Shown one piece after another: positions 15,880-62,111 of a DNA stretch of 64,000 nucleotides. The stretch is from Mytilus californianus (lineage: Eukaryota): positions 50,964,001-51,028,000 of the forward strand of contig NW_026262604.1 of the NCBI RefSeq assembly GCF_021869535.1. Reading direction: 5' to 3'. The notes beneath the pieces are model-generated. The model saw only the letters and a list, made by a program, of their open reading frames with translations, did not search any database and was not told the DNA's origin. The stretch's first letter is position 1; the number at the start of each line of letters is the position of its first letter. The position numbers and the translations under genes were made by a program.

Positions 15880-16157
15880 TTAGCGTTTTCCACCATGTCC
15901 GCCATTCCCACCATCCCAACGACCACCATTTCCTCCTCTCCCTCCATACCGACCGCTTCCTCCGTTCCAACCATCCCAACGACCACCGTTTCCTCCTCTC
16001 CTTCTATACCAACCGCTTCCTCCATTCCCACCATTCCATGTACCACCATTTCCACCTGTCCCATCATTTCCACCATTTCCTCCATTCCCACCATTCCAAG
16101 TACCACCGTTTCCACCATTTCCAGGTCTGGAGTTCCAATCAGGTTTTGGTTTTGGTC
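15880..16157 (-). CDS. A1 secreted Gly/Asn/Trp/Arg-rich peptide, exon 2 (terminal)
   Basis: Acceptor TTTTATTTTCAAG; (R)PKPKPDWNSRPGNGGNGGTWNGG...GWYRRRGGNGGRWDG...GGHGGKR*; 278 nt, phase 1, no internal stop. Confidence 0.9.
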
Positions 16158-16267
16158 CTTGAAAATAAAATGCATGATAATGTATTTAAGTAATGAGTCA
16201 AAAGAAATCAATTCGTAGGAAATTAGAATTGTTAATTAAATTACAATATATATGCTAGTGATGTCAA

Positions 16268-16737
16268 GTATTTATATGAAGCAAAATTCTTACAAAACCT
16301 TCTCAAAGACAAAAGGAATTCTTTGATTTACGTTCAGATATAGTGGTGAAGTCCTGAAAAAAAATCTTGCATTTCAAGGAGTTGTTCTATAAAATTTATT
16401 CCGAGTTAACTTTACTGACATTAAGGATACTACTGATAATAGTAGGTCATATCTTGAAATATTTTTAAAAATAAACACAGAGGGACGACTTCAAACTGAA
16501 TCTATGACAAAATTCAATTCAGTTACTTATTTCAAATGTCCATCTATAAGTAGTAACATATATTAATCTCAATCGTGAGAAAAAATTTTGATATCTCAAT
16601 TGGTGCTTTATGTACGTGCATGTTAAAAAATACTAACTATATTATTATCATTATGGTACTGTGAAAGCTTTTGCATAATTCCTAGAGGCTTCTACAAAAC
16701 TGATATGTTATAGCCATAAAAAGAGCTTTTAAAAAGA
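16268..16737 (+). mobile_element. Fossil Penelope-like RT fragment in the A1 intron
   Basis: Frameshifted motifs YLYEAKFLQNLLKD, FRYSGEVL (decayed RYIDDVL), IKDTTD, SYLEIFLKI, GRLQT..YDK, ISQLV.YVRAC. Copies at ~23086-23545, ~26715-27182, ~33475-33935, ~37115-37580. Confidence 0.75.
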
Positions 16738-17043
16738 TAATTAATGTACATAGACTTTAGTTTGAAACGCGCAAGGCTACATCAAAAAAGTATTACAAAA
16801 ACATCGAAATCCAAAGCAAATTCAAAACGGGGAAGTCCATAACAACTACCAAAATCAAACGCTATCAATCATCGCAATAAGTCAAAAAGTTAAATTCAAA
16901 CGTCGTTTTATCTCATCAACTCCAAATCTGTACATATAATAATGTTAAATATAAGCTCCTCAATATAATAAAATAAATATGAGATACGACTTCTAAAATA
17001 ATTTGAACCTCATTTAAGATACTAATTGATATGATTTACTTAC

Positions 17044-17107
17044 GCCTATACCAAGTTCCAGAAACTGATACAACCAGACATACGACTAAGATGATAGAAA
17101 GCTTCAT
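17044..17107 (-). CDS. A1 exon 1 (signal peptide)
   Basis: MKLSIILVVCLVVSVSG-TWYR + C | GTAAGT; C + GA = Arg, giving a 113-aa precursor. Confidence 0.9.
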
Positions 17108-17145
17108 TTTCTTCAATTTTCTACCTTTAGAGAGGAGTACAGATG

Positions 17146-17152
17146 TTTTATA
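17146..17152 (-). promoter_or_regulatory. TATA box of A1
   Basis: TATAAAA ending 39 nt upstream of the ATG; same position in the paralogs that retain a promoter. Confidence 0.7.
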
Positions 17153-17790
17153 GTCTTGATGAGGACATACAAACACGGATATAAGTAAGACAACGGGATG
17201 TGTTTTGATTTATATGAATAGTTTATGTCTATCATAGCAAGATTTCCGATACTTGAGCACAATGATTGTTTTGTAGGTTGTACAATAAGAAGAAATGATT
17301 GGTAAATGGGTACAAGCTTTTATTATATTTTATTACGTATAAGGAAAAAAGTAAAATAAACAGAATAGGAAGTTCATAATTGGCAAGGATTCGTGGTGTC
17401 TTATAGCTTTATATAATTGCAAACCTCTACAAAAACAATCTGAACATATATACCAGGCTTACATTTTGTACGTCAGACGCGACTTTAGTAAATTTGATTT
17501 AATAAAGATTTCGAGTTACGTTTTTTTCAATTTTTCTCACAACCATTTCAGACAAGATGTCATAAAAAAATAAGGCACTATCTCAAATAAAAGAAATTAT
17601 AAAACAAAATATTATCGATAAGTTTTATTTTGCTAACTTATTTTATTGTTTTACGATAGACAATTATGACAATAGTAAAAAAAAAAAAAAATAAATGAAT
17701 GTGGTTATTACGACATAGGATGTTGTTTTAACTATATATAAATGTTGTAATTGTAATGCTTAAATAATAGAATTGTTTACCATTTAAATA

Positions 17791-18122
17791 CTCTGCTGGT
17801 GGACTATCAGTCCCCGAGGGTATCACCAGCCCAGTAGTCAGTCCTTCAGTACTAACATGATTTATAACAAACCTTTATAAAATAGTCCGTTAATAAATTT
17901 TGAAATTATTAGAAACTAAAGGTTTCAACTCCCGCAGGCAAAGTTAACTTTAGATGGATTTGGCTATTTTTATGTCCTTTTCTGGTAATATAGCTCTTCA
18001 ACTGTTTCGGTTCTGATAAATCCTTGGCTTTCAAATATTCGGCTTTGAGCGTTCTTGATGAAGGTAGATCCAGAAAAGCGCCTCGGACGCATGTGATGTA
18101 TAAGTGTTGTTTTCATTTTTTA
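17791..18122 (+). mobile_element. ~330-bp non-autonomous repeat carrying a hammerhead-like motif (copy 1)
   Basis: Inserted after CCATTTAAATAC upstream of A genes; the homologous B-gene flank (~24720-24745) lacks it. Motif at 18049-18090 has C3U and a helix III mismatch. Confidence 0.65.
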
Positions 18123-19483
18123 TTAGATAAGTAACTGTATTAATGAATTAATATGTCATTATAGATTTTTACGTTGAAAATCTTCTCAAAGATAACATAA
18201 TTTTAATTTTGTTTGCGAGAAGCGCGTTTCAACTGAAATCAGTGGCGCTGATTCAAATAAGTTAGAATGCAAAATATGTTTTTTTAATTTTATTAATTTA
18301 ATCCTCTGAACATTTAAAGGTTCACATTTTGTATTTTGTGTACCTTAACTACTCAGAGTCGGTCAAATATAGTTTCATTCTTGCTTCTAGAAAGTGTTAC
18401 AAAATTTAAGTAAAATTCAATGTTTGACTAGGTAATAATCGTAAACGTGTGTGGCAAGGCATAGCGAAAAAGGAATAAATTTTTCACTAAGTGTAAACTA
18501 TTCTTTGGATTATTAAGATACATAAGGTGTGTTTGATGGTCATTTCAATTTGCTTTTCCTCTTTCTACACTCCATTTCCACAGAACATCAGTTAGAAATA
18601 GTGTTCGTATTTAATTAAAGACTTTTGAAACATCGCTTGTAAAATGTTTGCTGCAACTTACATAAATATAAAAATAAGAAGATGTGGTATGATTGCCAAT
18701 GAGACAACTCTCCACAAGAGACCAAAAGACACAGAAATTAACAACTATAGGACAAAGCCTTTTTTCGAAAGTAAATATGCTATATGACTATTTACAAATG
18801 ACACTGTCAGAGAACAAATTTAGTGAATATCTTTATAGACCACCAAAAAAATTTTCAGAAAAAATATTAATAATTCGTTTAAAGTCTTTAATTAAACGTG
18901 AATTTTTGGTTGAGTTTTTGTTTTCATTTTATCCGTCTGTCTGCCCGTCGGTCAGTTGAAAATTTAAAGACTATTCGTTCTATTCAGATATACAATGATA
19001 TCTTCTTTAAATTTAATTTCCACGTTAGGCTTGGTAAACGCTTTAAAATTAGTCAATAAAAAATGGGGTCACCGACCTCGAATACGATTTAATACGTCAT
19101 CTTTTTCATAAAATTTGAAATCGGGACTTGTTGATATCAACAGTGTTATATTTCATAAGAAGTCTTGTGAAATGATTTTTATTGATGTGCATTCGTCTGT
19201 TATTCGTCGTTCAAATACTGAAGATGAAAGTTTGTTAACCGATACATTAAAATTGTGCTCCAGATACCTGAAAATTTGGTCGCCATTTCACAAGCGTTCT
19301 AATTGAAAAAAAACCCGGAATTTAAGTAAAAAAAAGCACATTGTGTTTTCAAAGATCGTTTATTTATCTATATAGATTTTACATGTTTGTGTCGTTGGCT
19401 TACTGTAATGTTGGCGTTAATTCGAAATTTATTATTTTATACGTGTAGAAATGTAGGCGCCATACACTTACAATACTTCTGTA

Positions 19484-19680
19484 GTTTATTTCTGTCCGCA
19501 CTTTACACACTGGTGCCATGTGATCGTTCACTACAAGTGTATGTAGCATGTTTCTGTCCTCACTTTACAACCTTGTACCATGTGATCGTTCACTACAAGT
19601 GTATGTAACATATTTCTGTCCACACTTTTACTCACTGGTACCATTTGATCGTTCACTACAAGTGCATGTAGCATGTTTCA
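19484..19680. repeat. 62-bp minisatellite, 3 copies
   Basis: Unit CATGTTTCTGTCCACACTTTACACACTGGTACCATGTGATCGTTCACTACAAGTGTATGTAG. Confidence 0.85.
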
Positions 19681-22284
19681 TTGGTTTTCAAATGGCAAAT
19701 GCAATAGATTCAAACAAGCTTAATTTGTGACATAATTATTTAAGTGTTAGTATTTTTCTGTATTTTACTATGGGATTTTTGGTTCGGTATGTAGTATTTT
19801 CTTTGACTGTATAAACAATATATAAATAAGGAGATGTGGTATGATAAAAAAAGTATAACAAAAATACTGAACTCCAAGGCAAATTCAAAAAGAGAAAATA
19901 TATAACAACAGAAAAAATCAAACGCAATCAATCAACGGAACAAGTGAACAACAACTCTGCCATATTCCTGACTTGGTACAGGCAATTTCCGAAGAAAATG
20001 GTGAATTAAACCTGGTTTTATAACTAGCTAAACCGCCCACTTGTATGACAGTTGCGTTATATTGGCAAAATGTGGGTTAGCAACTCAGACAGACATAGAA
20101 GGTTAATGTGAGAATAATTGGGATCCAGCAGTCAAAACTGTGTAAATATACATCACAAACGTACAACACAACTGACTTAAAAAGACGCCATAAAAAAGTT
20201 GTAGTAAATAGTAATATTTCTATATATGTGGCAAGACCAAAAGTTTGCACGCCAGACGCGCGCCTCGTCAAGATTGAATCAGTTCATCTACTTTATACTG
20301 TAATACGTGTAAGTAAAGTTCTGAAGGACATCATCAATCTGTATACGTACATAAAGGTATAAAACATGAGCGTCAGTGAAAAGACAGTAATTGTCGAAAT
20401 GCACATTATTACAATGAAATGGGCACTGCTAATGTCATCGTGTACATAAACGTGATGTGATAAGCCATGGGCCAGTCAATTTACATTCCCAAACAGATTT
20501 GCCAATGTCAGGCGAAGTCAAACTTTTAATATTTAAAGTAGATATTTGCTTTTCGTCGAGTTCGAACACGTATTTTTATCGTAAAATAACAGATTTAAAC
20601 ATTGTTGTACACGTATGGCTAAATTGTATTCAATTCAGTTCACAATGCAGCCATTTCCAAAAGTTTTCCAATTTCAACATGTTTAACTTAAAGTAACAAT
20701 GCGACAGCTGTGTGCAATATCAGGTTCAAACAATGATTTGGTGTATTTATCAATATTGAGCCAAATTTCATTAGAAATAAAGCTTTGTTTTAAAAGAGAG
20801 GCGAAAAACAGCAAATGAACATTCAAACTCATAAGTCGAAATAGGAAGAAATACATTACTGGATAATGTTGGCCTTTAATGCAAAATTTTATAAATAGTG
20901 CGATATTGTATCAAAATAGTCTTCACTAACAAAGTAGAGCGGTGAGTAACATTTCGATTGTATGAATAAGTGAAAATAATTCAAACTCAGTTGAATGTGT
21001 GTTTTTTAGACTCATTGGCATACAAGTTCCTGAAAGTCTATGAATAGACCGTGCTACGTGAAGGAATTCAGTGTTACATTTTAATTGGCGTTTACTCTTT
21101 CGAAGATTTGAATAAATCTCATAACTAAGCATCCTGTTTTATCAACAAGATTTGAAAATACCAAACAGAAAAGTGTAAACAGACATATGATCATACATGT
21201 TTTGTCACTAGGTTTTCATCTCATTGATGTACATACCACATCTTTTGTATATCAACAGAAAAGACCAGTAGACTAAACCAGACTGTAACAAATGAAAAAC
21301 GACAAATTTGAGATTTCGAAAAAGATTAGCTAAACCTTAACAAATTATTTTGTCATTTCTTTCAGTTTTTATTGGTTAATTGTAAGTTGATGGCAGACGT
21401 TTTTTAGTTTCTGTGAAATTTGTGGACAATTTTTTTACAATAAGGGTAGATTTACAGTTTGAAGTAGTGTATACATATATATATAAATATAAACAAGTCT
21501 ACATTGAAAACAACGTTCACACCTATGCTTGCGTTGGATAAAAACCACAATTTTTATACGTGTGCATGCAAAACAAATTTCTTGATAGAGGAGTCTAAAT
21601 ACAGCACAAACAAAATTTTCCAAAAGACCAAAAAGTAAAAAAGTATATTTTAACAAAACGCATTTGACTAACAGGTCGAACAACAGATGTTCTTAAACCC
21701 TGCTGACTGCCAATGGCGATTGCCAAATAAACGGATCACAAGATGTTACAAAATGGATCTTTTAAAATTATTAATTAATACCAAACAGAAAACAATAAAC
21801 TTGCGGAAAAGATGGTATACCGCAAACAAAAGGTGCAAAAATTAGTACACCATATCCGGATTTCGACAATTAATGTCTTTTCAGTGATAATAGGGATCAA
21901 AACGGTATTTGGAAGGCCATATATTTCCCTCAATTTAGGATAGACTCTTGGATTTTGAAGAATCGAAATATTACAAATAGGATGAACGGATCATATAAAC
22001 CCGAAGGAAAATATAATACAAGCCCAAACGAAAAAATATAAACAAGTCTAAATTGAAAACAACGTTCAAACCTATGATTGCGTTGGATAAAAACCGCAAT
22101 TTTTATACGTGTGCATGCAAAACAAATTTCTTGGTAGAGGAGTCTAAATACAGCAAAAACAACATTTTCCAAAAGACCAAAAAAGTGAGAAAGTATATTT
22201 TAACAAAACGCATTTGACTAACAGGTCGAACAACAGATGTTATATATAAATATATATAAGTCTAAATTGAAAACAACGTTCAAA

Positions 22285-22286
<2 letters not shown>

Positions 22287-22329
<43 letters not shown>
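22287..22329. repeat. (TA)n microsatellite
   Basis: ~21 TA units; shorter at the paralogous site near 32685. Confidence 0.95.
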
Positions 22330-22333
<4 letters not shown>

Positions 22334-22708
22334 TTTGTTAAAATATACTTTTTCACTTTTGGTCTGTAGGAAAATGTTGTTTGTGCTGTATTTAACCCCT
22401 GTAGCAAGAAATTTGTTATAAAAATTGCGGTTTCTATCCAACGCAATCATAGGTTTGAACATTGTTTTCAATTCAGACTTGTTTATATATATTTATATTG
22501 TTGAAGACGCTATATTAACCTTTAAATGTATTTTTGTTCATTGGTGTTGTCAGGTTTTGTCTTATTGGTATATATCTCTAACTCTAATTTTCAATAAAAC
22601 ATGTTAGAGCATTAAACAATAAAAACACATGCGAACAAAGTTTAATCTATATTTTTGTGACAGAAGAATTTTGTCACATGTTCATATCGGACCTCGGTAA
22701 GTTATATT

Positions 22709-24077
22709 TTAGCGTTTTCCACCATGTCTGCCATTCCCACCATTCCAACGACCACCGTTTCCACCTCTCCCATAATTCCAACCGTTTCCACCATTTCCAC
22801 CTTTCCAATTACCACCATTTCCACCACTCCCATAATTCCAACCGTTTCCTCCATTCCCCTCCTCCAAGTACCACCATTTCCACCTGTCCCACCATTTCCT
22901 CCATTCCCCCCATTCCAAGTACCACCGTTTCCACCATTTCCAGGTCTAGTGTTTCAAGTAGGTTGAGGTTTTGGTCCTTGAAAATAAAACGCATGACAAT
23001 GTATTTAGGTGATGAGTCCAAAGTAATTGATTTTTCGGAAATTAAAATTGTTATATAATTACAATAAATATGCTAGCTGTATCAAGTATTTATATGAAGC
23101 AACATTCTTACAAAACCTTCTCAAAGACAAAAGGAATTTTTTAATTTACGTTCAGATATAGTGGTGAAGTCCTGAAAAAAATAAACAGCATTTAAAGGAG
23201 TTGTTCCATAAAATCTATTCCGAGTTAACTTTACTGACATTAAGGATACTACTGATAATAGTAGGTCATATCTTGAAATATTTTTAGAAATAAACACAGA
23301 GGGATGACTTCAAACTGAATCTATGACAAAATTGAATTCAGTTTCTTACTTCAATCTTTTAGTAGTAACATATCTTAGTCCCAATCGTGCGAAATTTTTA
23401 TATCTCAATTAGTGCTTTGCGCACGTGCATGTGAAACAATACGAACTATATTATTATCATTATCGTACTGGGAAAGCTTTTGCAACATTCGGAGAGGTTT
23501 CTTCAACACTGATCATTTAGAGTCATAAAGAAAGCTTTCAAAAATTAATAAGATATGAGTACATCTTATCACAAGAAATACCATTTAATCTGAAAAAGCT
23601 ACATTGTGACGATGTCATCATATGTATCGTGCCGTCTTCAAAGTTGATTTCAAACATCGTTATATCTCATCAACACCAAAATATAATCATATTCATTAAC
23701 AGATTTTATCGACAAAAAGTAAAATTGTTTATGTTATATTTTTTGTATTTTAAGCTTTTGATACATCGGAATTCAAAATAGTACGCTTAATTGGCAAATA
23801 AATAAGAATAAGAATAATATAAACTGCATTTAGAATAAAACACATGAAGAAATAAATACTGATGGCTATATATTAATTAAATCGAAATGCCATCTACCAG
23901 ATCTGTTCATGGAATATTTTGAAATAAAAACTCCTCAGTATAATGAAATACATAAGAAATAGGACTTCTGAAATCATGTGAACAACATAAATAATAATTG
24001 ATATGCGTACGCCTATTCCAAGTTCTAGAAACTGATACAACCAGACAGACCGCCGATAAGATGATAGAAAGCTTCAT
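22709..24077 (-). pseudogene. B1 pseudogene of the Kunitz-less Gly/Asn/Trp family
   Basis: Exon 1 24077-24011 MKLSIILSAVCLVVSVSRTWNR|GTACGC; exon 2 22976-22709 PKPQPT*(TGA 22956-22954)NTRPGNGG..., then a 1-nt frameshift, ending GRHGGKR*. TATA at 24117-24123. Confidence 0.88.
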
Positions 24078-24791
24078 TTTCTTCTAAATTTCTACCTTGA
24101 GAGAGGGGTATAGATGTTTTATAGTCTTGATGTGGACATACAAACACGGATATAAGTAAGGCAACGGGATGTGTTTCAATTGATATGAATAGTTTACGTC
24201 AGTCATGTGCAGATGTCCGATACTTGAGCACACAATGATTGTTTTGTAGGTTGTAAAATAAGACGAAATGATCGCTGAATGGGTACAAGTTTTTATTATA
24301 CTTTGTTATGTATGAGGAAAAAGTAAAATAAACAGTAAAGGAAATTCATAATTGTCAAGGATTCGGAGTGACTTATAGCTTTATTATACTTGAAAATCTA
24401 TACAGGAAACAAACTCAATATAACTACCTGGCTTAACATTTTGTACGTCAGACTCGCCTTTAGTAAAATAAAGAGTTGCTTTTTTTTTCACTTTTTCTCA
24501 CAACCATTTCAGATGTCATAATTAAATAAGGCATTATCAAATAAAACAAGTTATAGCAAAATCTTATCGATAACTTTTATTATGTTAACTTTTTTTATTA
24601 TTTTACGGTAGACAATTAGGACAGTAGTGAAAAAAAATTTATGTGGTTAATGCGATATAGGATGGTGTGTTAACGATATATAAATCAGGTATTTATAATG
24701 CTTAAATAAGGAATTGTTTGCCATTTAAATACACATGTTAATAAATAAGTTATTATATAAAAGTCATAAGAAACTTCAAATTTAAAAAAAA

Positions 24792-24845
24792 AGTTCCAGA
24801 AACTGATACAACCAGACAGACCGCTCAGATGATAGAAAGCTTTAT
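24792..24845 (-). pseudogene. Orphan dead signal-peptide exon
   Basis: ATA AAG CTT TCT ATC ATC TGA GCG GTC TGT CTG GTT GTA TCA GTT TCT GGA ACT: ATG>ATA, TTA>TGA, no donor. Confidence 0.8.
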
Positions 24846-26327
24846 TTTCCTCTAAATTTCTAAATTTAAATCTATTTTTTTCAACTGTCCACCGAAGTTC
24901 AAATGAAGTGGATGTAAGCAATTATAGGCAACCGTACGGACTTCAACACTGAGAAAAATCCATACCGTATAGTCATCAGAAATATTTGTAAGGAAGGTCA
25001 TCATCAACATTAACCAATTTATATTGGAAGTACCTATATACACGATATACATAAAGTATTTTTTTCATTTAATACTGTCTTCAATAGCAAACATGGAGCA
25101 ATGAATAGCTTTTTGACTTAATGGATATGTGAAATTGTTGAGAAAAAAAAATGTTTTAAAATGTATTACATAGACTCTTCAACATCTGAATTCGAGTTAG
25201 TTTTAACAACTTTCTAATGTTGTCTATGTGAGTTCAACAAACTTGCATTGGGAAAACTGGTGTTATCTCTCTCGGGGGGAAACTGGTATCACCTCTTTGG
25301 TGAAAATAATTACCCATTAAGTCCCATTTACCAGGCATAAACCGATTCCGACTTTGTCCGCCTTTGCCAGTTGTTACAATAGTAAAGGACCGGAAACTCA
25401 AAAATGGTACATAGTTTTCATATATGTATCATCATTTTGGCAAACAACAAGAGTGTAATATCAAACCCCACTCCCATACGAAGTTAAGAACATCTAGCTT
25501 TTGTTAGCGTTGTGTGGTTCATTTATGTGTTTTGGAGTTTTGTGTGGCGTCCATTTCGCTTAACCAGTATACTTTATTGTTTATGGGCCAGCAGAATCCC
25601 GCCTGCGGGTGGGGGAATTTCTCGCTGCGTTGAAGACCCATTGGTGGCTTTGGGCCGTTTTCTGCTCTTAGTATTATTGTTATATAAAGGAATGTCACTG
25701 TAAATGTTATTTTATACTTGAAGCAAGAAACAAGTGGATGACTTAATTTTTTTCTTTTTTCGTTTTTAAAGCATATTATAAAACCTATCTACTCATATCT
25801 TATTTCAAAATTCTATCTCATAGATTTATTTTTATTCACAAAAAAGTGATGCTCGACTTGTAGCTTGAAAAATAGCACGGTGACCCATACTTTTTATTGT
25901 ATTTAAAAAAAACCTTGATAAATCTACATTTTGGCAATGTATAAGAAACGTCTATTTAAGGAAATATAAAGTGATGATCCACCTTAATTTGGAATATAAA
26001 ATCATCACATCAAATAAGACATTACTGTACTAAAAATTGTAAAAAATAATTCCCACATAAACTGATATATATAAATTGTTGAAGACGATATATTAACCTT
26101 TAAATGTCTTTTTGTTCATTGGTGTAGTCAGGTTTCTGTCTTATTGGTGTATATCCCATATTCCACTTTTCAATAAAACATGTTAGAGCATTAAACAATA
26201 TAAACACATAAGAACAAAGTTTTATCTATATTTTAAATATATATAAGATAGATAAATCATCATGAAAATTAGCATAATTTTGTCACATGTTCATTATTCC
26301 TTAGTCCGGATCTCGGTCATTTATATT

Positions 26328-26605
26328 TTAGCGTTTTCCACCATGTCCGCCATTCCCACCATTCCAATGACCACCGTTTCCTCCTCTCCCTCCATATCGA
26401 CTGTTTCCTCCATTCCCACCATTCCAACGACCACCGTTTCCTCCTCTCCCTCCATATCGACTGTTTCCTCCATTCCCACCATTCCAACGACCACCATTTC
26501 CACCTGTCCCATCATTTCCACCGTTTCCTCCATTCCCACCTTTCCAAGTACCACCATGTCCACCATTACCAGGTCTGGAGTTCCAATCAGGTTTTGGTTT
26601 TGGTC
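26328..26605 (-). CDS. A2 secreted Gly/Asn/Trp/Arg-rich peptide, exon 2
   Basis: (R)PKPKPDWNSRPGNGGHGGTWKGG...RWNGGNGGNSRYGGRGG...GGHGGKR*; 278 nt, intact. Confidence 0.9.
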
Positions 26606-27489
26606 CTTGAAAATAAAATGCATGATAATGTAATTAAGTGATGAGTCAAAAGTAATCGATTCGTAGGAAATTGAAATTGTTAATTAATTACAATATATAT
26701 GCTAGTGATGTGAAGTATTTATATGAAGCAACATTCTTACAAAACCTTCTCAAAGACAAAAGGAATTTTTTAATTTACGTTCAGATATAGTGGTGAAGTC
26801 CTCAAAAAACCCTTGCATTTCAAGGAGTTGCTCTATAAAATTTATTCCGAGTTAACTTTACTGACATTAAGGATACTACTGATAATAGTAGGTTATATCT
26901 TAAAATATTTTTAAAAATAAACACAGAGGGACGACTTCAACCTGAATCTATGACAAAATTCAATTCAGTTACTTATTTCAACTTTCCATCTATAAGTAGT
27001 AACATATCTTAGTCTCAATCGTGAGAAAAAATTTTGATATCTCAATTTGTGCTTTATGTACGTGCATGTTTAAAAATACGAACTATATTATTATCATTAT
27101 GGTACTGTGAAAGCTTTTGCATCATTCCTAGAGGCTTCTACAAAACTGATATGTTATAGCCATAAAAAGAGCTTTTAAAAAGATAATTAATGTGCATAGA
27201 CTTTAGTTTGAAACGCGCAAGGCTACATCAAAAAAGTATTACAAAAACATCGAAATTCAAAGCAAATTCAAAACGGGGAAGTCCATAACAACTACCAAAA
27301 TCAAACGCTATCAATCATCGCAATAAGTCAAAAAGTTAAATTCAAACGTCGTTTTATCTCATCAACACCAAATCTGTACATATAATATTATTAAATATAA
27401 GCTCCTCAATATAATAAAATAGATTTGAGATACGACTTCTAAAATAATGTGAACCTCATTTAAGATACTAATTGATATGATTTACTTAC

Positions 27490-27553
27490 GCCTATACAAA
27501 GTTCCAGAAACTGATACAACTAGACATACGACTAAGATGATAGAAAGCTTCAT
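27490..27553 (-). CDS. A2 exon 1 (signal peptide)
   Basis: MKLSIILVVCLVVSVSGTLYR + C | GTAAGT; TATAAAA at 27591-27597. Confidence 0.9.
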
Positions 27554-28251
27554 TTTCTTCAAATTTCTACCTTGAGAGAGGGGTACGATGTTTTATAGTC
27601 TTGATGAGGACATAAAAACACGGATATTAGTAAGGCAACGGGATGTGTTGTGATTTATATGAATAGTTTATGTCAGTCATGGCAAGATTTCCGATACTTG
27701 AGCACAATGATTGTTTTGTAGGTTGTACATGTTGTACAATAAGAAGAAATGATTGGTAAATGGTTACAAGCTTTTATTATATTTTGCAACGTATAAGGAA
27801 AAAAGTTAAATAAACGGAATAGGAAGTTCATAATTGGCAAGTATTCAGTATGTCTTATAACTTTAATATAATTACAAACCTATACAGAAACAATCTGAAC
27901 ATATATACCAGGCTAACATTTTGTACGTGAGACGCGACTTTAGTAAATTTGACTTAATAAAGATCTCGAGTTACTTTTTTTCACTTTTTCTAACAACCAT
28001 TTCAGACAAGATGTCAAAAAAAATAAGGCACTATCTCAAATAAAAGAAGTTATAAAACAAAATCTTTTCGATAAGTTTTATTATGCTAACTTATTTTATT
28101 GTTTTACGATAGACAATTATGACAATAGTAAAGAAAAAAAAATAAATGAATGAATGCGGTTATTACATGTACGACATAGGATGTTGTTTTAACTATATAT
28201 AAATGTTGTAATTGTAATGTTTAAATAATAGAATTGTTTGCCATTTAAATA

Positions 28252-28581
28252 CTCTGCTGGTGGACTATCAGTCCCCGAGGGCATCATCAGCCTAGTAGTC
28301 AGTCCTTTAGTACTGACATGATTTATAACAAACCTTTCTAAAATTGTTCGTTCATAAATTTTGAAATTATTAGAAACAAAGGTTTGAACTCCCTCAGGCA
28401 AAGTTGACCTTAGATGGATTTGGTTATTGTAGGTCCTTTTTGGTAATATTGCTCTTCAAATGTTTCGGTTCTTATAAATCCTTGGCTTTCAAATATTCGG
28501 CTTTGAGCGTTCTTGATGAGGGTAGATCCAGAAAAGCGCCTCGGACGCATGTGATGTATAAGTGTTGTTTTCATTTTTTAA
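28252..28581 (+). mobile_element. ~330-bp hammerhead-bearing repeat (copy 2)
   Basis: Paralog of 17791-18122; motif at 28507-28548. Confidence 0.6.
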
Positions 28582-29956
28582 TAGATAAGTAACTGTATTA
28601 ATGAATTAATTGGTCATTATAGATTTTTACGTTGAAAATCTTCTCAAAGATAACATAATTTTAATTTTGTTTGCGAGAAGCGCGTTTAAACTGAAATCAG
28701 TGGCGCTTATTCAAATAAGTTAGAAAGCAAAATATGTTTTTTTAATTTTATTAATTTAATCCTCTGAACATTTAAAGGTTCACATTTTGTATTTTGTGTA
28801 CCTTAACTACACACAGTCGGTCAAATATAGTTTCATTCTTGCTTCTAGAAAGTGTTACAAAATTTAAGTAAAATTCAATGTTTAACTAGGTAATAATCGT
28901 AAACGTGTGTGGCAAGGCATAGCGAAAAAGGAATAAATTGTTCACTGAGTGTAAACTATTCTTTGGATTATTAAGATACATAAGGTATGTTTGATTGTCA
29001 TTTCAATTTGATTTTCCTCTTTCTACACTCCATTTCCACAGAACCTCAATTAGAAAAAGTGTTCGTATTTAATTAAAGACTTTTGAAACATCGCTTGTAA
29101 AATGTTTGCTGCAACTTACACAAATATAAAAATATGATTGCCAATGAGACAACTCTCCACAAGAGACCAAATGACACAGAAATTAACAACTATAGGACAA
29201 AGCCTTTTTACGAAAGTAAATATGCTATATGACTATTTACAAATGACACTGTCAGAGAACAAATTTAGTGATTATCTTTATAGACCACCAAAAACGTTTT
29301 TAGAAAAAATATTATTAATTCGTTTAAAGTCTTTAATTAACCGTGAATTCTTGGTTGAGTTTTTGTTTTCATTTTATCCATCTGTCTGCCCGTCGGTCAG
29401 TTGAAAATTTATAAACTATTCGTTCTATTCAGATATACAATGATATCTTCTTTAAATTTAATTTCCACTTTAGGCTTGGTAAACGCTTTAAAATTAGTCA
29501 ATAAAAAATGGGGTCACCGACCTCGAATACGATTTAATACGTCATCTTTTTCATAAAATTTGAAATCGGGACTTGTTGATATCAACAGTGTTATATTTTA
29601 TAAGAAGTCTTGTGAAATGATTTTTATTGATGTGCATTCGTCTGTTATTCCTCATTCCGACAAATACTGAATATGAAAGTTTTTTAACCGATACATTAAA
29701 ATTGTGCACCAGATACCTGAAAATTGGATGTCGAACGTCTATCGTCGCCATTTCACAAGCGTTCTTATTGAAAAAAAACCGGAATTTAAGTTAAAAAAAA
29801 AGCACACTGTGTTTTCGAAGATCGTTTATTTATCTATATAGATGTACATAGATTTTACATGTTTGTGTCGTTGGCTTACTGTAATGTTGGCGTTAATTCG
29901 AAATTTATTATTTTATACGTGTAGAAATGTAGGCGCCATACATATACAATACTTCT

Positions 29957-30155
29957 GTAATTTATTTCTGTCCACACTTTACACACTGGTGCCAATGTGA
30001 TCGTTCACTACAAGTGTATGTAGCATGTTTCTTTCCTCACTTTACAACCTTGTACTATGTGATCGTTCACTACAAGTGTATGTAGCGTGTTTCTGTCCAC
30101 ACTTTACACACAGATACCATTTGATCGTTCACTACAAGTACATGTAGCATGTTTC
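29957..30155. repeat. 62-bp minisatellite, 3 copies
   Basis: Paralog of 19484-19680. Confidence 0.85.
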
Positions 30156-33096
30156 ATTGGTTTTCAAATGGCAAATGCAATAGATTCAAACAAACTTAAT
30201 CTGTCACATGATTATTTAAGTGTTAGTATTTTTCTGTATTTTACTATGAGATTTTTGGTTCGGTATGTAGTATTTTCTTTGACTGTATAAACTATATATA
30301 AATAAGGAGATATGGTTTGATAAAAAAGTATAACAAAAATACTGAACTCTAAGGCAAATTCAAAAAGAGAAAATCTATATCAATCAACGGAACAAATGGA
30401 CAACAACTCTGCCATATTCCTGACTTGGTACAGGCAATTTCCGAAGAAAATGGTGGATTAAACCTGGTTTTATAGCTAGGTAAACCACCCACTTGTATGA
30501 CAGTTGCGTTATATTGGCAAAATGTGGGTTAGCAACTCAGACGACATAGTAGATTAATTTGACAATAATTGGGACCCAGCGGCCAAAACTGTGTAAATAT
30601 ACATCACAAACGTACAACACAACTCACTTAAAAAGACGCCAAAAAAAAAGTTGTAGTAAATAGTAATATTTTTATATATGTGGCAAGACCAAAAGTTTGC
30701 ACTCCAGACGCGCGCCTCGTCTTGATTGCCATTTAGACATCTACGCACCATACATCAAATGAAGTGAATGTAAGCAATTATAGGCAAACTTACAGCCTTC
30801 AACAATGAGAAAAACACATACTGTATAGTCAGACATGAAAGGCCCTACATGAAAAATATAAAACTAGTCAATTAAGAAAACTAACGGCATAATTTGTAAC
30901 AAAACCATTAACGAAAAACAAATATGATAGACATGAGACAATGACAACCACTGAACTACACGCTACTGACTTGGGACTATGTTGATGTTACCCTTAATTC
31001 GTCCTTGCAAATATTTGAAAGTATATCTATGTTGATTTTACCCACAATTCTTCCCATGCATATATTTGATTTTAACCACAACTCTTCCATGCATATATTT
31101 GAAATAATCGACATCTACCCAAGAACGTTATTGAGGTAATAGTTAGGGGTAAACTTTGCGTGCAAAAAAATCCTGAATGACGAAGAACCTCAACACAAAC
31201 ACTGTTCATGTACATATCATATGGGTTTTGGAGCAAATCAATGCAGCTTATCCTTCTTATATACAAAAAAAAAATTAAAAACATTGAAATACAGCCAAAT
31301 GTAAGGACGTGTGGCTAGAAACATAACCATACAAAAACGTTACACAATAACTTGAGTGCATGCAATATGTCGCCGGAAAAGCAAAAGATCTGTTGTATCA
31401 TTACAAAGATTCTTGACTTTAAAAAGTTCATCTACATTTCACTGTAATAAGTGTGAGTAAAGTTCTGAAGGACATCATCAATCTGTATACGTACATAAAG
31501 GTATAAAACATGAGCGTCAGTGAAAAGACATTAATTGTCGAAATGCGCATTATTGCAATGAAATGGGCACTGCTAATGTCATCGTGTACATAAACTTGAT
31601 GTGATAAGCCATGGGCCAGTCAATTTATATTCCCAAACAGATTTGCCAATGTCAGGCGAAGTCAAACTTTTTTAAATATCTAAAGTAGATATTTGCTTTT
31701 TGTCGTGTTCGAACACGCATTTTTATCGTAAAATATCAGATTTAAACATTTGTTGAAGACGTATGGCTAATTTTTATTCAATTCAGTTCGCACTTTAGCC
31801 ATTTTCAAAAGTTTTCCAATTTTAACATGCTTAACTTAAAGTAACAATGCGACAGCTCTGTGTGCAATAGCAGGTTCAAGTAATGATTTGGCGAATTTAT
31901 CAATATTGAGCCAAATTTCATTGGAAGTAAAGCTTTGTTTTAAGAGAGGCGAAAGATACCAAATGAACATTCAAACTCATAAGTCGAAATAGGAAGAAAT
32001 ACAATACTGGATAATGTTGGCCCTTAATTGAAAATTTTACATAAGCATATAAATTGTGCGATATTGTATCAAAATAGTCTTCATTAACAAAGTAGAGCGG
32101 TGAGTAACATTTCGATTGTATGGATAAGTGAAAATAATTCAAACTCAGTTTAATGTGTGTTTTGTAGACTCATTGGCATACAAGTTCCTGAAAGTCTATG
32201 AATAGACCGTGCTATATGAAGGAATTCAGGGTTACATTTTAATTGGCGTTTACTCTTTCGAAGACTTGAATAAATCTTATTACTAAGCATCCGGTTTTAT
32301 CAGCAAGATTTAAAAATACCAAACAGAAAATTGTAAACAGACATATAATCATATATGTTTTGTCGTCAGGTTTCCGTCTCATTGACGTACATACCACATC
32401 TTTTGTTTTGTATATCGACAGAAAAAACCAGTAGACGAAACCAGACTGTAACAAATGAAAAACGACAAATTTGAGATTTCGAAAAAAATTAGCTAAACCT
32501 TAACAAATTAATGTGTCATTTCTTTCAGTTTTAATTGGTTACTTGTAAGTTGATGGCAGATGTTTTATAGTTTCTGTGAATTTTTTGACAATTTGTTTAC
32601 AATACGGGATGATTTACAGTTTGAAGTAGTGTATACATATATATAAATATATGTAAGTCTAAATTGAAAACAACGTTCAAACCTATATATATATATATGC
32701 GTTTTGTTAAAATATACTTTTTTACTTTTTTGGCCTGTCAGAAAATATTGTTTGTGATGTATTTAGACCCCCTGTAACAAGACATTTGCGGTTTTTATCC
32801 AACGCAATCATAGGTTTGAACATTGTTTTCAATTTAGACTTGTATATATGTATTTATATATATATATATATATATTGTTGAAGACGCTATATTAACCTTT
32901 AAATGTCTTTTTGTTCATTGGTGTTGTCAGGTTTCTGTCTTATTGGTATATATCTCTAACTCCAATTTTCAATAAAACATGTTAGAGCGTTAAACAATAA
33001 AAACACATGCGAACAAAGTTTAATCTATATTTTTGTGACAGAAGAATTTTGTCCCATGTTCATATTTCCTTAGTCCGGACCTCGGTAAGTTATATT

Positions 33097-34467
33097 TTAG
33101 CGTGTTCCACCATGTCCGCCATTCCCACCTTTCCAACGACCACCGTTTCCGCCTCTTCCATAATTCCAACCGTTTCCTCCATTTCCACCTTTCCAATTAC
33201 CTAAATTTCAAACTCTCCCATAATTCCAACCGTTTCCCTCATTCCCACCTCTCCAAGTACCACCATGTTCACCATTCCCACCATTTCCTCCATTCCCCCC
33301 ATTCCAATTACTACTGTTTCCACCATTTCCAGGTCTGGTGTTTCAAGCAGGTTGATGTTTTGGTCCTTGAAAATAAAACGCATGATAATGTATTTAGGTG
33401 ATAAGTCCAAAGTAATTGATTCTTCGGAAATTAAAATTGTTATATAATTACAATAAATATGCTAGCTGTATCAAGTATTTATATGAAGCAACATTCTTAC
33501 AAAACCTTCTAAAAGACAAAAGGATTTTTTTTTAATTTACGTTCAGATATAGTGGTGAAGTCCTGAAAAAATAAACAGCATTTCAAGGAGTTGTTCCATA
33601 AAATCTATTCCGAGTTAACTTTACTGACATTAAGGATACTACTGATAATAGTAGGTCATATCTTGAAATATTTTTAGAAATAAACACAGAGGGATGACTT
33701 CAAACTGAATCTATGACAAAATTGAATTCAGTTTCTTACTTCAATCTTTTAGTAGTAACATATCTTAGTACCAATCGTGTGAAATTTTTATATCTCAATT
33801 AGTGCTTTGCGCACGTGCATGTGAAACAATACGAACTATATTATTATCATTATCGTACTGGGAAAGCTTTTGCAACATTCGGAGAGGTTTCTTCCACACT
33901 GATCATTTAGAGTCATAAAGAAAGCTTTCAAAAATTAATAAGACATGAGTACATCTTATCACAGGAAATACCATTTAATCTGAAAAAGCTACATTGTGAC
34001 GATGTCATCATATGTATCGTGCCGTCTTCAAAGTTGATTTCAAACATCGTTGTATCTCATCAACACCGAAATATAATCATATTCATTAACAGATTTTATC
34101 GACATGAAGTAAAATTGTTTATTTTATACTTTTTGTATTTTAAGCTTTTGATACATCGGAATTCAAAATAGTACGCTTAATTGGCAAATAAATAAGAATA
34201 AGAATAATATAAACTGCATTTAGAATAAAACACATGAAGAAATAAATACTGATGGCTATATATTATTTAAATCGAAATGCCATCTACCAGATCTGTTCAT
34301 GGAATACTTTAAAATAAAAACTCCTCAGTATAATGAAATACATAAGAAATAGGACTTCTGAAATCATGTGAACAACATAAATAATAATTGATATACGTAC
34401 GCCTATTCCAATTTCTAGAAACTGATACAACCAGACAGACCGCCGGTAAGATGATAGAAAGCTTCAT
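33097..34467 (-). pseudogene. B2 pseudogene of the Kunitz-less Gly/Asn/Trp family
   Basis: Exon 1 34467-34401 MKLSIILPAVCLVVSVSRNWNR|GTACGT; exon 2 33365-33097 with the same TGA as B1 (33345-33343) plus a second TGA (33210-33208); ends GGHGGTR*. TATA at 34507-34513. Confidence 0.88.
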
Positions 34468-35187
34468 TTTCTTCTAAATTTCTACCTTGAGAGAGGGGTA
34501 TAGATGTTTTATAGTCTTGATGTGGACATACAAACACGAATATAAGTAAGGCAACGGGATGTGTTTCAATTGATATGCATAGTTTACGTCAGTCATGTGC
34601 AGATGTCCGATACTTGAGCACACAATGATTGTTTTGTAGGTTGTAAAATAAGACGAAATGATCGCTGAATGGGTACAAGTTTTTATTATATTTTGTTACG
34701 TATAAGGAAAAAGTAAAATAAACAGTAAAGGAAGTTCATAATTGTCAAGTGTTCGGGGTGACTTATAGCTTTATTATACTTGAAAATCTATACAGGAAAC
34801 AAACTCAACATAACTACCTGGCTTAACATTTTGTACGTCAGACTCGCCTTTAGTAAAATAAAGAATTACTTTTTTTTTCACTTTTTCTCACAACCATGTC
34901 AGACAAGATGTCATAATTAAATAAGGCATAATCAAATAAAACAAGTTATAGCAAAATCTTATCGATAACTTTTATTATGTTAACTTTTTTTAATTATTTT
35001 ACGGTAGACAATTAGGACAGTAGTGAAAAAAAATGTATGTGGTTAATGCGATATAGGATGGTGTGTTAACGATATATAAATCAGGTATTTATAATGCTTA
35101 AATAAAAGAATTGTTTGCCATTTAAATACACATGTTAATAAATAAGTTATTATATAAAAGTCATAAGAAACTTCAAATTTAAAAAAA

Positions 35188-35242
35188 AAGTTCCAGAAAC
35201 TGATACAACCAGACAGACCGCTCAGATGATAGAAAGCTTTAT
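35188..35242 (-). pseudogene. Orphan dead signal-peptide exon (duplicate of 24792-24845)
   Basis: Same ATA start and TGA lesion. Confidence 0.8.
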
Positions 35243-36727
35243 TTTCCTCTAAATTTCTAAATTTAAATCTTTTTTTTTTCAACTGTCCACCGAAGTTCAA
35301 ATGAAGTGGATGTAAGCAATTATAGGCAACCGTACGGACTTCAACACTGAGAAAAATCCATACCGTATAGTCATCAGAAATATTTGTAAGGAAGGTCATC
35401 ATCAACAAAAACCAATTTATATTGGAAGTACCTATATACACGATATACATAAAGTATTTTTTTCATTTAATACTGTCTTCAATAGCAAACATGGAGCAAA
35501 GAATAGCTTTTTGACTTAATGGATATGTGAAATTGTTGAGAAAAAAAAATGTTTTAAAATGTATTACATAGACTCTTCAACATCTGAATTCGAGTTAGTT
35601 TTAACAACTTTCTAATGTTGTCTATGTGAGTTCAACAAACTTTCATGGGGAAAACTGGTGTTATCTCTCTCGGGGGGAAACTGGTATCACCTCTTTGGTG
35701 AAAATAATTACCCATTTAGTCCCATTTACCAGGCATAAACCGATTCCGACTTTGTCAGCCTTTGCCAGTTGTTACAATAGTAAAGGACCGGAAACTCAAA
35801 AATGGTACATAGTTTTCATATATGTATCATCATTTTGGCAAACAACAAGAGTGTAATATCAAACCCCACTCCCATACGAAGTTAGGAACACCTAGCTTTT
35901 GTTAGCGTTGTGTGGTTCATTTATGTGTTTTGGAGTTTTGTGTGGCGTCCATTTCGCTTAACCAGTATACTTTATTGTTTATGGGCCAGCAGAATCCCGC
36001 CTGCGGGTGGGGGAATTTCTCGCTGCGTTGAAGACCCATTGGTGGCTTTGAGCCGTTTTCTGCTCTTAGTATTATTTTTATATAAAGGAATGTCACTGTA
36101 ACTGTTATTTTATACTTGAAGCAAGAAACAAGTCGGGTGACTTAATTTTTTTCTTTTTTCGTTTTTAAAGCATATTATAAAACCTATCTACTCATATCTT
36201 ATTTCAAAATTATATCTCATAGATTTATTTTTATTCACAAAAAAGTGATGCTCGACTTGTAGCTTGAAAAATAGCACGGTGACCCATACTTTTTATTGTA
36301 TTAAAAAAAAAACCCTTGATAAATCTACATTTTGGCAATGTATAAGAAACGTCTATTTAAGGAAATATAAAGTGATGATCCACCTTAATTTGGAATATAA
36401 AATCATCACATCAAATAAGACATTACTGTACTAAAAATTGTAAAAAATAATTCCCACATAAACTGATATATATAAATTGTTGAAGACGATATATTAACCT
36501 TTAAATGTCTTTTGTTCATTGGTGTAGTCAGATTTCTGTCTTATTGGTGTATATCCAATATTCCACTTTTCAATAAAACATGTTAGAGCATTAAACAATA
36601 TAAACACATAAGAACAAAGTTTTATCTATATTTTAAATATATATAAGATAGATAAATCATCATGAAAATTAGCATAATTTTGTCACATGTTCATTTTTCC
36701 TTAGTCCGGATCTCGGTCATTTATATT

Positions 36728-37005
36728 TTAGCGTTTTCCACCATGTCCGCCATTCCCACCATTCCAATGACCACCGTTTCCTCCTCTCCCTCCATATCGA
36801 CTGTTTCCTCCATTCCCACCATTCCAACGACCACCGTTTCCTCCTCTCCCTCCATATCGACTATTTCCTCCATTCCCACCATTCCATGTACCACCATTTC
36901 CACCTCTCCCATCATTTCCACCATTTCCTCCATTCCCACCTTTCCAAGTACCACCATGTCCACCATTACCAGGTCTGGAGTTCCAATCAGGTTTTGGTTT
37001 TGGTC
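36728..37005 (-). CDS. A3 secreted Gly/Asn/Trp/Arg-rich peptide, exon 2
   Basis: (R)PKPKPDWNSRPGNGGHGGTWKGGNGGNGGNDGRGG...GGHGGKR*; 278 nt, intact. Confidence 0.9.
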
Positions 37006-37887
37006 CTTGAAAATAAAATGCATGATAATGTATTTAAGTGATGAGTCAAAAGTAATCGATTGGTAGGAAATTGAAATAGTTAATTTATTACAATATATAT
37101 GCTAGTGATGTGAAGTATTTATATGAAGCAAAATTCTTACGAAACCTTCTCAAAGACAAAAGGAATTCTTTAATTTACGTTCAGATATAGTGGTGAAGTC
37201 CTGAAAAAAAATCTAGCATTTCAAGAAGTTGTTCCATAAAATCTATTTCGAGTTAACTTTACTGACATTAAGGATACTACTAATAATAGGAGGTCATATC
37301 TTGAAATAGTTTTTGAATATAAACACAGAGGGACGACTTCAAACTGAATCTATGACAAAATTTAATTCAGTTACTTATTTCAACTTTCCATCTATTAGTA
37401 GTAACATACCTTAGTCTCAATCGTGTGAAATTTTGATATCTCAATTGGTGCTTTATGTACGTGCATGTTAAAAGATACGAAATATATTATTATCATAATG
37501 GTACTTTGAAAGTTTTTGCATAATTCCTAGAGGCTTGTACAAAACTGATATGTTATAGCCATAAAACAGCTTTTAAAAAGATAATTAATATGTATAGACT
37601 TTAGTTTAAAACGCGCAAGGCTACCTCAAAAAAGTATTACAAAAACATCGAAATCCAAAGGAAAATCAAAACGAAGAAGTCCATAACAACCGCCAAAATC
37701 AAACGCTATCAATCATCGCAATAAGTCAAAAATTTAAATTCAAACGTCGTTATATCTCATCAACACCAAATCTGTACATATAATACGATTAAATACAAAC
37801 TCCTCAATATAATGGAATAAATATGAAATAAGACTTCTAAAATAATGTTAATCTCATTTAAGATACTAATTGATATGATTTACTTAC

Positions 37888-37951
37888 GCCTATGCCAAGT
37901 TCCAGAAACTAATACAACCAGACAAACGACTAAGATGATAGAAAGCTTCAT
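37888..37951 (-). CDS. A3 exon 1 (signal peptide)
   Basis: MKLSIILVVCLVVLVSGTWHR + C | GTAAGT; TATAAAG at 37990-37996. Confidence 0.9.
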
Positions 37952-50464: not shown

Positions 50465-50528
50465 GCCAATTCCAGGTTCCAGAAACTGATACAACCAGAT
50501 AGACAGCTAAGATGATAGAAAGCTTCAT
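50465..50528 (-). CDS. K2 exon 1 (signal peptide)
   Basis: MKLSIILAVYLVVSVSGTWNW + C | GTAAGT; spliced product is 156 aa. Confidence 0.9.

Positions 50529-62109: not shown

Positions 62110-62111
<2 letters not shown>

What the first reader, a model, noticed from the sequence alone, without database searches (positions are those of the whole stretch)
15880..37951. Three intact 113-aa precursors of a Cys-free, cationic Gly/Asn/Trp/Arg peptide ending in a possible amidation signal
Seen: the A1 mature region (96 aa if cleaved after VSG) has 41 Gly, 14 Asn, 8 Trp, 11 Arg, 3 Lys, 4 Asp (about +10), no Cys, and ends HGGKR*. A1-A3 keep identical length while exchanging repeat content (WYRRR/RWDG in A1 vs NSRYGGR in A2/A3). 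Established: C-terminal Gly-Lys-Arg is the carboxypeptidase/PAM amidation signal; Arg+Trp/Tyr in Gly/Asn spacers drives cation-pi coacervation and is also typical of membrane-active antimicrobial peptides. Inference: an amidated AMP or a coacervate-forming adhesive/coating peptide, compositionally reminiscent of mussel foot protein 3 but much poorer in Tyr.
Basis: partly seen in the sequence, partly recalled or inferred. Interest (0 to 1): 0.7.

Follow-up and report, generated by a model that had tools for sequence, protein, structure and literature searches.

The report
Mussel-only secreted glycine-rich cationic peptide genes
Three neighbouring, unannotated mussel genes each encode a small secreted, floppy, strongly positive peptide rich in glycine, asparagine, tryptophan and arginine. 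They arose from a protease-inhibitor gene that lost its inhibitor domain, and they look most like the glycine-rich germ-killing peptides of arthropods, but neither expression nor activity could be tested here.

Summary
A1, A2 and A3 are intact two-exon genes on the minus strand. Each has a TATA box, a 64-nt signal exon ending at a GTAAGT donor, a phase-1 intron and a terminal exon. Each encodes 113 aa, and A1's 96-aa mature part has the exact composition reported.

They sit in a 10.4-kb tandem repeat, next to two dead copies (B1, B2) and two intact paralogues (K1, K2). K1 and K2 carry a Kunitz domain between the same signal/RPKPKP head and a Gly/Asn tail. The A exon 2 is the first ~20 nt of the Kunitz exon joined to the tail exon.

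A profile search of 1.84 billion protein representatives found three relatives, all in Mytilus. No Pfam, NCBIfam, PDB or ESM Atlas match was found, and AlphaFold2 gives no fold (pLDDT 39).

My best reading (about 0.4) is a glycine-rich, membrane-active host-defence peptide. A matrix or adhesive role (about 0.3) and a young, barely selected gene (about 0.2) remain open. The GKR amidation end is present here, but the M. edulis relative ends WKR. The mfp-3 likeness fails on tyrosine.

The scan has noted this locus before (s1-330633, s1-330697) and other, apparently different glycine-rich cationic candidates elsewhere in this genome.

The parts
17044..17107 (-). A1 exon 1: ATG, 17-aa signal peptide, then TWYR plus the first base of a split Arg codon. 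It ends at a GTAAGT donor (phase 1).
17147..17152 (-). A1 TATA box, 45 nt upstream of the ATG. It is conserved in A2 (27592-27597), A3 (37991-37996), B1, B2, K2 and K1.
15880..16157 (-). A1 exon 2: RPKPKPDW head, 3.8 copies of a 20-aa Gly/Asn/Trp/Arg repeat, HGGKR, stop TAA at 15882-15880.
15779..15784 (-). A1 AATAAA, 95 nt after the stop. A2 and A3 have AATATA at the homologous site.
27490..27553 (-). A2 exon 1 (signal peptide, TLYR).
26328..26605 (-). A2 exon 2 with stop.
37888..37951 (-). A3 exon 1 (signal peptide, TWHR).
36728..37005 (-). A3 exon 2 with stop. It is 99% identical to A2 over exon 2 and the 3' flank.
22709..24077 (-). B1 pseudogene: exon 1 at 24077-24011 (67 nt), exon 2 from 22976. 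TGG became TGA at 22956-22954 (7th codon of exon 2). A 9-nt and a 1-nt deletion lie further on.
33097..34467 (-). B2 pseudogene: exon 1 at 34467-34401, exon 2 from 33365. It has the same TGA at 33345-33343 and a second stop further on.
47997..50528 (-). K2, an intact paralogue: signal exon 50528-50465, Kunitz exon 48892-48722, Gly/Asn/Ser/Val/Trp tail exon 48232-47997. The tail and 3' UTR are 80% identical to A1 exon 2 and its 3' UTR.
61217..63331 (-). K1, an intact paralogue: Kunitz exon 63331-63161 and acidic Gly/Asn/Asp tail exon 61614-61217. Its signal exon lies about 800 nt beyond the window end (L007:837-776).

Best explanation
A1-A3 are real, young, Mytilus-restricted genes. Each makes a secreted, intrinsically disordered peptide of about 9.5 kDa, built as signal peptide, a short Trp/Tyr/Arg-Pro-Lys head, and four 20-aa Gly/Asn repeats that each carry Trp or Tyr and Arg (net +10 to +12, pI about 12). 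They descend from a gene for a secreted Kunitz protease inhibitor with a Gly/Asn tail, through a deletion that removed the Kunitz domain and the intron behind it (shown). The tail then became arginine-rich (inferred from comparison with the neutral K2 and acidic K1 tails). The most likely function is host defence of the glycine-rich antimicrobial-peptide type: the cationic Arg/Trp stickers bind and disturb microbial envelopes while the Gly/Asn spacers keep the chain flexible (inferred). The C-terminal GKR may be trimmed and amidated, which is possible but not conserved. Tandem triplication with gene conversion supplies sequence variants.
For: Gene anatomy: TATA box, ATG, (-3,-1)-type signal cleavage site, conserved GTAAGT donor, AG acceptor and stop are present in all three copies. 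A canonical AATAAA is present in A1 only; A2 and A3 have the variant AATATA. The reading frame is fixed by homology with K1/K2 and with XP_071139162.1.

Origin: A1 16170-16136 matches the Kunitz exon start at 28/30, and 16123-15747 matches the K2 tail and 3' UTR at 277/347.

Retention: there are no indels in the slippage-prone coding sequence, where 1.6-3.1 per pair are expected from the flanks. dN/dS is 0.3-0.6, while the B copies decayed. An intact relative in M. edulis shares 19 of 22 signal-exon residues and the repeat design.

Class features: 43-44% Gly, pI 11.6-12.0, 8-11 aromatic residues and 10-11 Arg, no N-glycosylation sequons, and no predicted fold. This is the same design as armadillidin and other proven glycine-rich antimicrobial peptides (PMC5031766). 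Low Tyr and no Cys argue against DOPA- or disulfide-cross-linked materials.
Against: The genes are absent from public protein sets, so they may be silent.

The coding sequence diverges about as fast as non-coding DNA (A1-A2: 0.074 against 0.057). Substitutions are not concentrated at third codon positions, and dN/dS is not significantly below 1.

The K1 and K2 tails are not cationic, so the ancestral tail function was not AMP-like. Kunitz proteins with low-complexity tails are also typical of byssus and shell secretomes. GKR is not conserved in M. edulis. The class of glycine-rich antimicrobial peptides is compositional rather than homologous, so resemblance is weak evidence.
Confidence: 0.4

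Rival explanations
1. The peptide is a structural, adhesive or coating component of byssus, periostracum or shell matrix. It would condense by Arg-Trp/Tyr cation-pi contacts between Gly/Asn spacers and be co-deposited with its Kunitz-bearing paralogues, which protect the material from proteases.
For: The paralogues K1 and K2 join a protease-inhibitor domain to Gly/Asn tails of very different charge, a pattern typical of secreted matrix proteins. Proteinase inhibitors are among the highly expressed foot genes of mussels (PMC7971044, PMC5549309). The composition (Gly, Asn, Arg, Trp) overlaps mfp-3 and thread matrix proteins (from memory). Twelve Asn-Gly pairs per peptide recall the deamidation-prone thread matrix proteins. 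The peptide is predicted to be disordered.
Against: Only 2-3 Tyr and no Cys in the mature part, so there is almost no capacity for DOPA or cysteinyl-DOPA cross-linking. There is no sequence relation to any named foot or shell protein. The family motifs were not found in the searched paper library.
Confidence: 0.3
2. The genes are young by-products of a deletion in a Kunitz-tail gene, multiplied by a recent 10.4-kb tandem duplication. They have little or no selected function and are possibly not expressed.
For: The copies differ by only 3-8%, so three intact reading frames are only weak proof of selection. The coding substitution rate is about equal to the non-coding rate. Sister copies B1 and B2 are already dead. 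A canonical AATAAA is present only in A1. No public gene model covers them.
Against: No indel is found in a 60-nt repeat array in any of three copies, against 1.6-3.1 expected per pair. Promoter, splice sites and signal peptide are all kept. M. edulis keeps an intact Kunitz-less relative with the same signal peptide and a near-identical C-terminal end.
Confidence: 0.2
3. It is a neuropeptide or hormone precursor, or an RNA-binding hnRNP-like protein as the RefSeq name of the M. edulis relative suggests.
For: The C-terminal GKR is the classical neuropeptide amidation signal. The Gly/Arg/aromatic composition resembles RGG domains, which is why NCBI named XP_071139162.1 'hnRNP 87F-like'.
Against: A2 and A3 have no internal dibasic cleavage site apart from an RR followed by Pro. 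There is no RRM or any other Pfam domain. A signal peptide sends the product out of the cell.
Confidence: 0.03

Closest known systems
Arthropod glycine-rich antimicrobial peptides (armadillidin, acanthoscurrin, ctenidin)
   Same: They are secreted, linear and Cys-free, with 45-70% Gly, pI 10-12 and short repeated Gly-aromatic-basic motifs. They have no defined structure and several are C-terminally amidated. The size range of 53-132 aa covers the 96-aa A peptides (PMC5031766).
   Different: There is no sequence homology. Here the aromatic residue is mainly Trp, Asn is the second most common residue, and the repeat unit is 20 aa. Activity and haemocyte or immune expression are unknown. The origin from a Kunitz gene is unique.
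Nematode NLP-29/CNC (caenacin) clusters of Gly/Tyr/Trp peptides (from memory)
   Same: They are tandem clusters of tiny few-exon genes for secreted Gly-aromatic repeat peptides.
   Different: They are unrelated in sequence and much shorter. Their induction by infection is documented, whereas nothing is known here.
Type II crustins of decapods: Gly-rich region plus WAP inhibitor-type domain (from memory; crustins are named as chimeric AMPs in PMC7017220)
   Same: The K1 and K2 paralogues have the same logic: a protease-inhibitor fold joined to a glycine-rich low-complexity region in one secreted protein.
   Different: The domain is Kunitz rather than WAP, and the Gly-rich part is C-terminal. 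The A genes have lost the folded domain altogether.
Mussel foot protein 3 and thread matrix proteins (from memory)
   Same: They are small, basic, disordered proteins rich in Gly, Asn, Arg and Trp, with many Asn-Gly pairs.
   Different: Tyr is 2-3% here rather than about 20%. The peptide is larger than mfp-3, no sequence similarity was found, and the signal peptide is different.
Myticalins, the Cys-free linear AMPs of Mytilus gills (PMC12294457)
   Same: They are Mytilus-restricted, tandemly expanded with many pseudogenes, cationic, sometimes Trp-rich, have a phase-1 intron in the coding sequence, and carry Gly plus a basic end read as an amidation signal.
   Different: Myticalins are Pro/Arg-rich peptides of 17-47 aa, followed by a C-terminal extension, and have three exons. 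The A genes have two exons, stop right after KR, and are Gly-rich. No similarity was retrieved in any search.
XP_071139162.1, 'hnRNP 87F-like', Mytilus edulis (85 aa)
   Same: It is a true family member: 19 of 22 identical signal-exon residues, the same Gly/Asn/Trp/Arg repeats, and an end that differs from the A end (GGNGGHGGKR) only by W for the last G.
   Different: It lacks the PKPKPDWNSRP head, has three rather than four repeats, and ends WKR rather than GKR. Its name is an artefact of composition.

Membership tests
Glycine-rich cationic antimicrobial peptides (a compositional class) | Signal peptide and a small secreted precursor | tested here: met
   17-aa hydrophobic leader ending VSG (LVSG in A3), from a canonical two-exon model. 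No signal-peptide predictor was available, so this was judged by eye.
Glycine-rich cationic antimicrobial peptides (a compositional class) | High Gly content, net positive charge, repeated Gly-aromatic-basic motifs, no Cys | tested here: met
   43-44% Gly, +10 to +12, pI 11.6-12.0, 3.8 copies of a 20-aa repeat.
Glycine-rich cationic antimicrobial peptides (a compositional class) | C-terminal amidation (many members) | tested here: inconclusive
   GKR-stop in A1-A3 and B1, TR in B2, WKR in the M. edulis relative, NGNG in K2. The chemistry is not testable here.
Glycine-rich cationic antimicrobial peptides (a compositional class) | Antimicrobial activity and immune-tissue or inducible expression | not testable with these tools
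Mussel foot protein 3 | Tyr/DOPA richness (about one residue in five, from memory) | tested here: not met
   2-3 Tyr in 96 residues.
Mussel foot protein 3 | Sequence similarity to known mfp-3 variants | tested here: not met
   The word search and the profile search of 1.84 billion representatives returned only three unnamed or misnamed Mytilus proteins.
Kunitz/BPTI inhibitors (PF00014) | Six-Cys Kunitz domain | tested here: not met
   No Pfam hit and no Cys in the A mature part. K1 and K2 exons hit PF00014 at 1.6e-19 and 9.4e-19. The A genes are descendants of the family, not members.
hnRNP 87F / RGG RNA-binding proteins | RRM domains and intracellular location | tested here: not met
   No Pfam domain and an N-terminal signal peptide.
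Myticalins | Three exons, with signal peptide, cationic peptide, dibasic site and C-terminal extension (PMC12294457) | tested here: not met
   The TATA box lies 45 nt before the ATG, so there is no separate 5' UTR exon. The stop follows KR directly.

The most novel reading that the evidence does not exclude
These are the first glycine-rich antimicrobial peptides of any bivalve, a class that a 2025 review of mussel AMPs (PMC12294457) states has never been found in the group. They were created recently, and in traceable steps, when a secreted Kunitz protease inhibitor lost its folded domain and its disordered Gly/Asn tail became an Arg/Trp-rich effector. A more speculative addition: the twelve Asn-Gly pairs would deamidate with time and erase the positive charge, giving a self-limiting peptide.
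Probability: 0.33. Interest if true: 0.7.

Novelty: new variant of a known kind. Interest (0 to 1): 0.5.

Why it matters
If the peptides are made and active, they would fill a recognised gap, because glycine-rich AMPs are common in arthropods but unreported in bivalves. The locus also holds the parent form (Kunitz plus tail), the derived form (tail only) and dead copies side by side. It could therefore show, step by step, how a new effector arises from the low-complexity tail of an older protein. If the peptides instead go into byssus or periostracum, they would be a Trp/Arg-based, nearly DOPA-free member of the mussel materials toolkit, of interest for cation-pi adhesion. In either case the three genes are missing from public annotation and should be added.

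Tried and rejected
- Alternative reading frames: a Glu/Met/Val frame on the same strand, and Pro/Phe, Ile/Pro/Thr and His/Ser frames on the other strand, are open by repeat arithmetic. I rejected them because only the Gly frame follows from the conserved GTAAGT donor, and K1/K2 fix that phase.
- Family scans: Pfam and NCBIfam gave nothing for the A exon. PDB sequences gave one chance hit at E = 1.6. ESM Atlas gave no usable hit.
- Fold: I considered a polyglycine-II bundle (snow-flea antifreeze type). AlphaFold2 gave pLDDT 39 and no such fold, so I did not pursue it.
- Literature: a motif search for family-specific strings gave zero papers. NGGNGG gave only unrelated hits. 'hnRNP 87F' with Mytilus led to an unrelated proteomics table. 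The gill 'glycine-rich secreted protein' of Mytilisepta (PMC5549309) is only a lead, and its identity with this family is untested.
- Wider locus: 40 kb on each side holds no further family member or informative neighbour. Own-genome searches found the family only at this locus.
- Not done: the third word search (for K-type orthologues) was not spent. The joined 113-aa protein was not sent to any search tool.
Full report
WHAT IS THERE. The window is AT-rich animal DNA (about 32% GC). It lies on a 66-Mb contig of a 1.65-Gb assembly with 175 contigs. The only public relatives are Mytilus proteins. Earlier notes of this scan call the genome the California mussel. That matches my memory of the M. 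californianus assembly statistics, but I did not verify it.

Three near-identical 64-nt first exons start with ATG and encode a 17-aa hydrophobic leader ending in Ser-Gly. They continue with four codons and one extra base, and end at a GTAAGT donor that is invariant in A1-A3. About 0.9 kb downstream, a ttttcaag acceptor opens a 278-nt terminal exon. Joined in phase 1, each pair gives 113 codons and a stop.

A TATA box sits 44-45 nt before each ATG. A1 has AATAAA 95 nt after its stop, while A2 and A3 carry AATATA at the homologous place. The A1 composition, charge and HGGKR end are exactly as reported, and A2 and A3 have the same length with different repeat content. Exon 2 is 3.8 copies of a 60-nt unit.

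WHY THIS FRAME. All six frames are open across the repeat, so an open frame alone proves nothing. The frame is fixed by paralogy. K2 (signal exon 50528-50465) and K1 (signal exon just outside the window) have the same exon-1 end. Their second exon starts with the same GACCAAAACC and then encodes a Pfam Kunitz domain (E = 9.4e-19 and 1.6e-19). Phase 1 therefore gives Arg-Pro-Lys-Pro-Lys-Pro in all family members. The K tail exons, again in phase 1, read in the Gly/Asn frame. The RefSeq model of the M. edulis relative uses that frame too.

LOCUS AND ORIGIN. The A genes lie in a 10.4-kb tandem repeat, present as two full units and a truncated third. Each full unit also holds a B gene with its own promoter and a 67-nt first exon. 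B1 and B2 share a TGG-to-TGA change in the seventh codon of exon 2 and carry further deletions or stops, so they died before the unit was duplicated.

Identity along the units is mosaic. A1 resembles A2 in the intron and upstream region (95-99% through the intron, 97-98% in the distal upstream blocks), whereas A2 resembles A3 in exon 2 and the 3' flank (96-100%). This points to exchange between copies.

A1 16170-16136 matches the acceptor and first bases of the K1 Kunitz exon at 28/30. A1 16123-15747 matches the K2 tail exon and 3' UTR at 277/347. The first Kunitz Cys codon reads Trp in the A genes. So the A/B exon 2 is a Kunitz exon start fused to a tail exon, as the scan's note s1-330697 proposed. 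The whole family, including a degenerate array at 7.6-9.2 kb, is confined to this locus in the genome.

RELATIVES. The word search with exon 2 found one protein, XP_071139162.1 of M. edulis (85 aa, misnamed 'hnRNP 87F-like'). Searching with that protein found only itself. A profile of A1-A3, that protein and the K2 tail, run against 1.84 billion cluster representatives, found three proteins. All were Mytilus, and two were evidently mispredicted fragments of tail arrays.

Pfam, NCBIfam, PDB sequences and the ESM Atlas gave nothing. The window's own A proteins are not in the public collection, so they are unannotated. The M. edulis protein shares 19 of 22 signal-exon residues, the repeat design, and a C-terminal end that differs only by W for the last G. 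It lacks the PKPKP head and ends WKR.

IS IT UNDER SELECTION? Only weakly demonstrable. Pairwise dN/dS is 0.3-0.6 on 11-25 substitutions. The coding substitution rate is about the same as the non-coding rate. The best internal sign is that a slippage-prone repeat has no indel in any copy, where the flanks predict 1.6-3.1 per pair (P(0) = 0.04-0.2 per pair, and the pairs are not independent). The second sign is the intact Kunitz-less relative in another species.

HOW IT PROBABLY WORKS. The product is secreted, about 9.5 kDa, pI 11.6-12.0, without Cys or N-glycosylation sequons, with 10-11 Arg and 8-11 aromatic residues spaced by Gly/Asn. AlphaFold2 gives no fold (pLDDT 39). This is the design of proven glycine-rich antimicrobial peptides. 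Armadillidin has 47% Gly, pI 12, a repeated Gly-Phe-His/Asn-Arg/Ser motif, no defined structure and rapid membranolytic killing (PMC5031766).

The K1 and K2 tails are acidic and neutral. The arginines of the A tails are therefore a derived feature, which fits a new, charge-dependent role. I commit to a host-defence peptide at about 0.4.

A material role (cation-pi coacervate, co-deposited with the Kunitz paralogues) is nearly as defensible at about 0.3. Glycine-rich proteins serve as glues as well as antimicrobials (PMC11772090), and protease inhibitors are prominent in mussel foot secretomes (PMC7971044, PMC5549309). The near absence of Tyr and Cys argues against the usual mussel cross-linking chemistry. 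A barely functional young gene remains possible at about 0.2.

AMIDATION. It is not a family constant, given WKR in M. edulis, TR in B2 and NGNG in K2.

NOVELTY. A 2025 paper from the main mussel-AMP group states that no glycine-rich peptides are known from mussels or any bivalve (PMC12294457). The family's motifs occur in none of the searched papers. The kind, a secreted glycine-rich cationic repeat peptide, is known. The family, its restriction to Mytilus and its traceable birth from a Kunitz gene are new. This scan has flagged other, apparently different glycine-rich cationic candidates elsewhere in the same genome, so this is not the only such lead.

LIMITS. There was no RNA, proteomic or functional evidence. 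The joined spliced protein was translated only locally and was never searched as one piece. Statements about mfp-3, thread matrix proteins, nematode NLP/CNC peptides and crustins rest on my own knowledge unless a paper is cited.

Noticed in passing
window 24770-24880 and 35165-35275 (minus strand): Each repeat unit holds an extra relic of the signal exon (87% identical over about 78 nt) with ATG changed to ATA and no donor site. It lies about 0.7 kb upstream of the B exon 1.
   Followed up: partly
window 48775-50188: A minisatellite of about 27 copies of a 53-nt unit fills intron 1 of K2. The units repeat the acceptor and PKP-coding start of the Kunitz exon. The scan has already noted this as s1-330664.
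   Followed up: no
window 63331-63161 and 48892-48722: The residue after the second Cys (the inhibitor's P1 position, by alignment with BPTI from memory) is Phe in K1 and Ser in K2. The two inhibitors therefore probably differ in target protease.
   Followed up: no
window 7600-9220 and 10770-10811 (minus strand): A 1.6-kb degenerate Gly/Asn/Trp array drifts between reading frames. It lies downstream of a signal-like exon whose GTAAGT donor is lost, so it is probably a decayed long-tailed family member.
   Followed up: partly
window 14613-15329 (plus strand): A 238-aa ORF carries a GIY-YIG nuclease domain (Pfam E = 2.3e-6). It lies just outside the end of the tandem array and may be a fragment of a mobile element.
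   Followed up: partly
window 15880-16157, 26328-26605, 36728-37005: All six reading frames stay open for about 100 codons across the repeat. This is a trap for ORF-based gene callers, and two of the three database 'relatives' are such misreadings.
   Followed up: yes
window 40500-41100 (minus strand): A short tandem repeat with strong GC skew lies between A3 and K2. It gives repeated open-frame segments and has no evident relation to the family.
   Followed up: no
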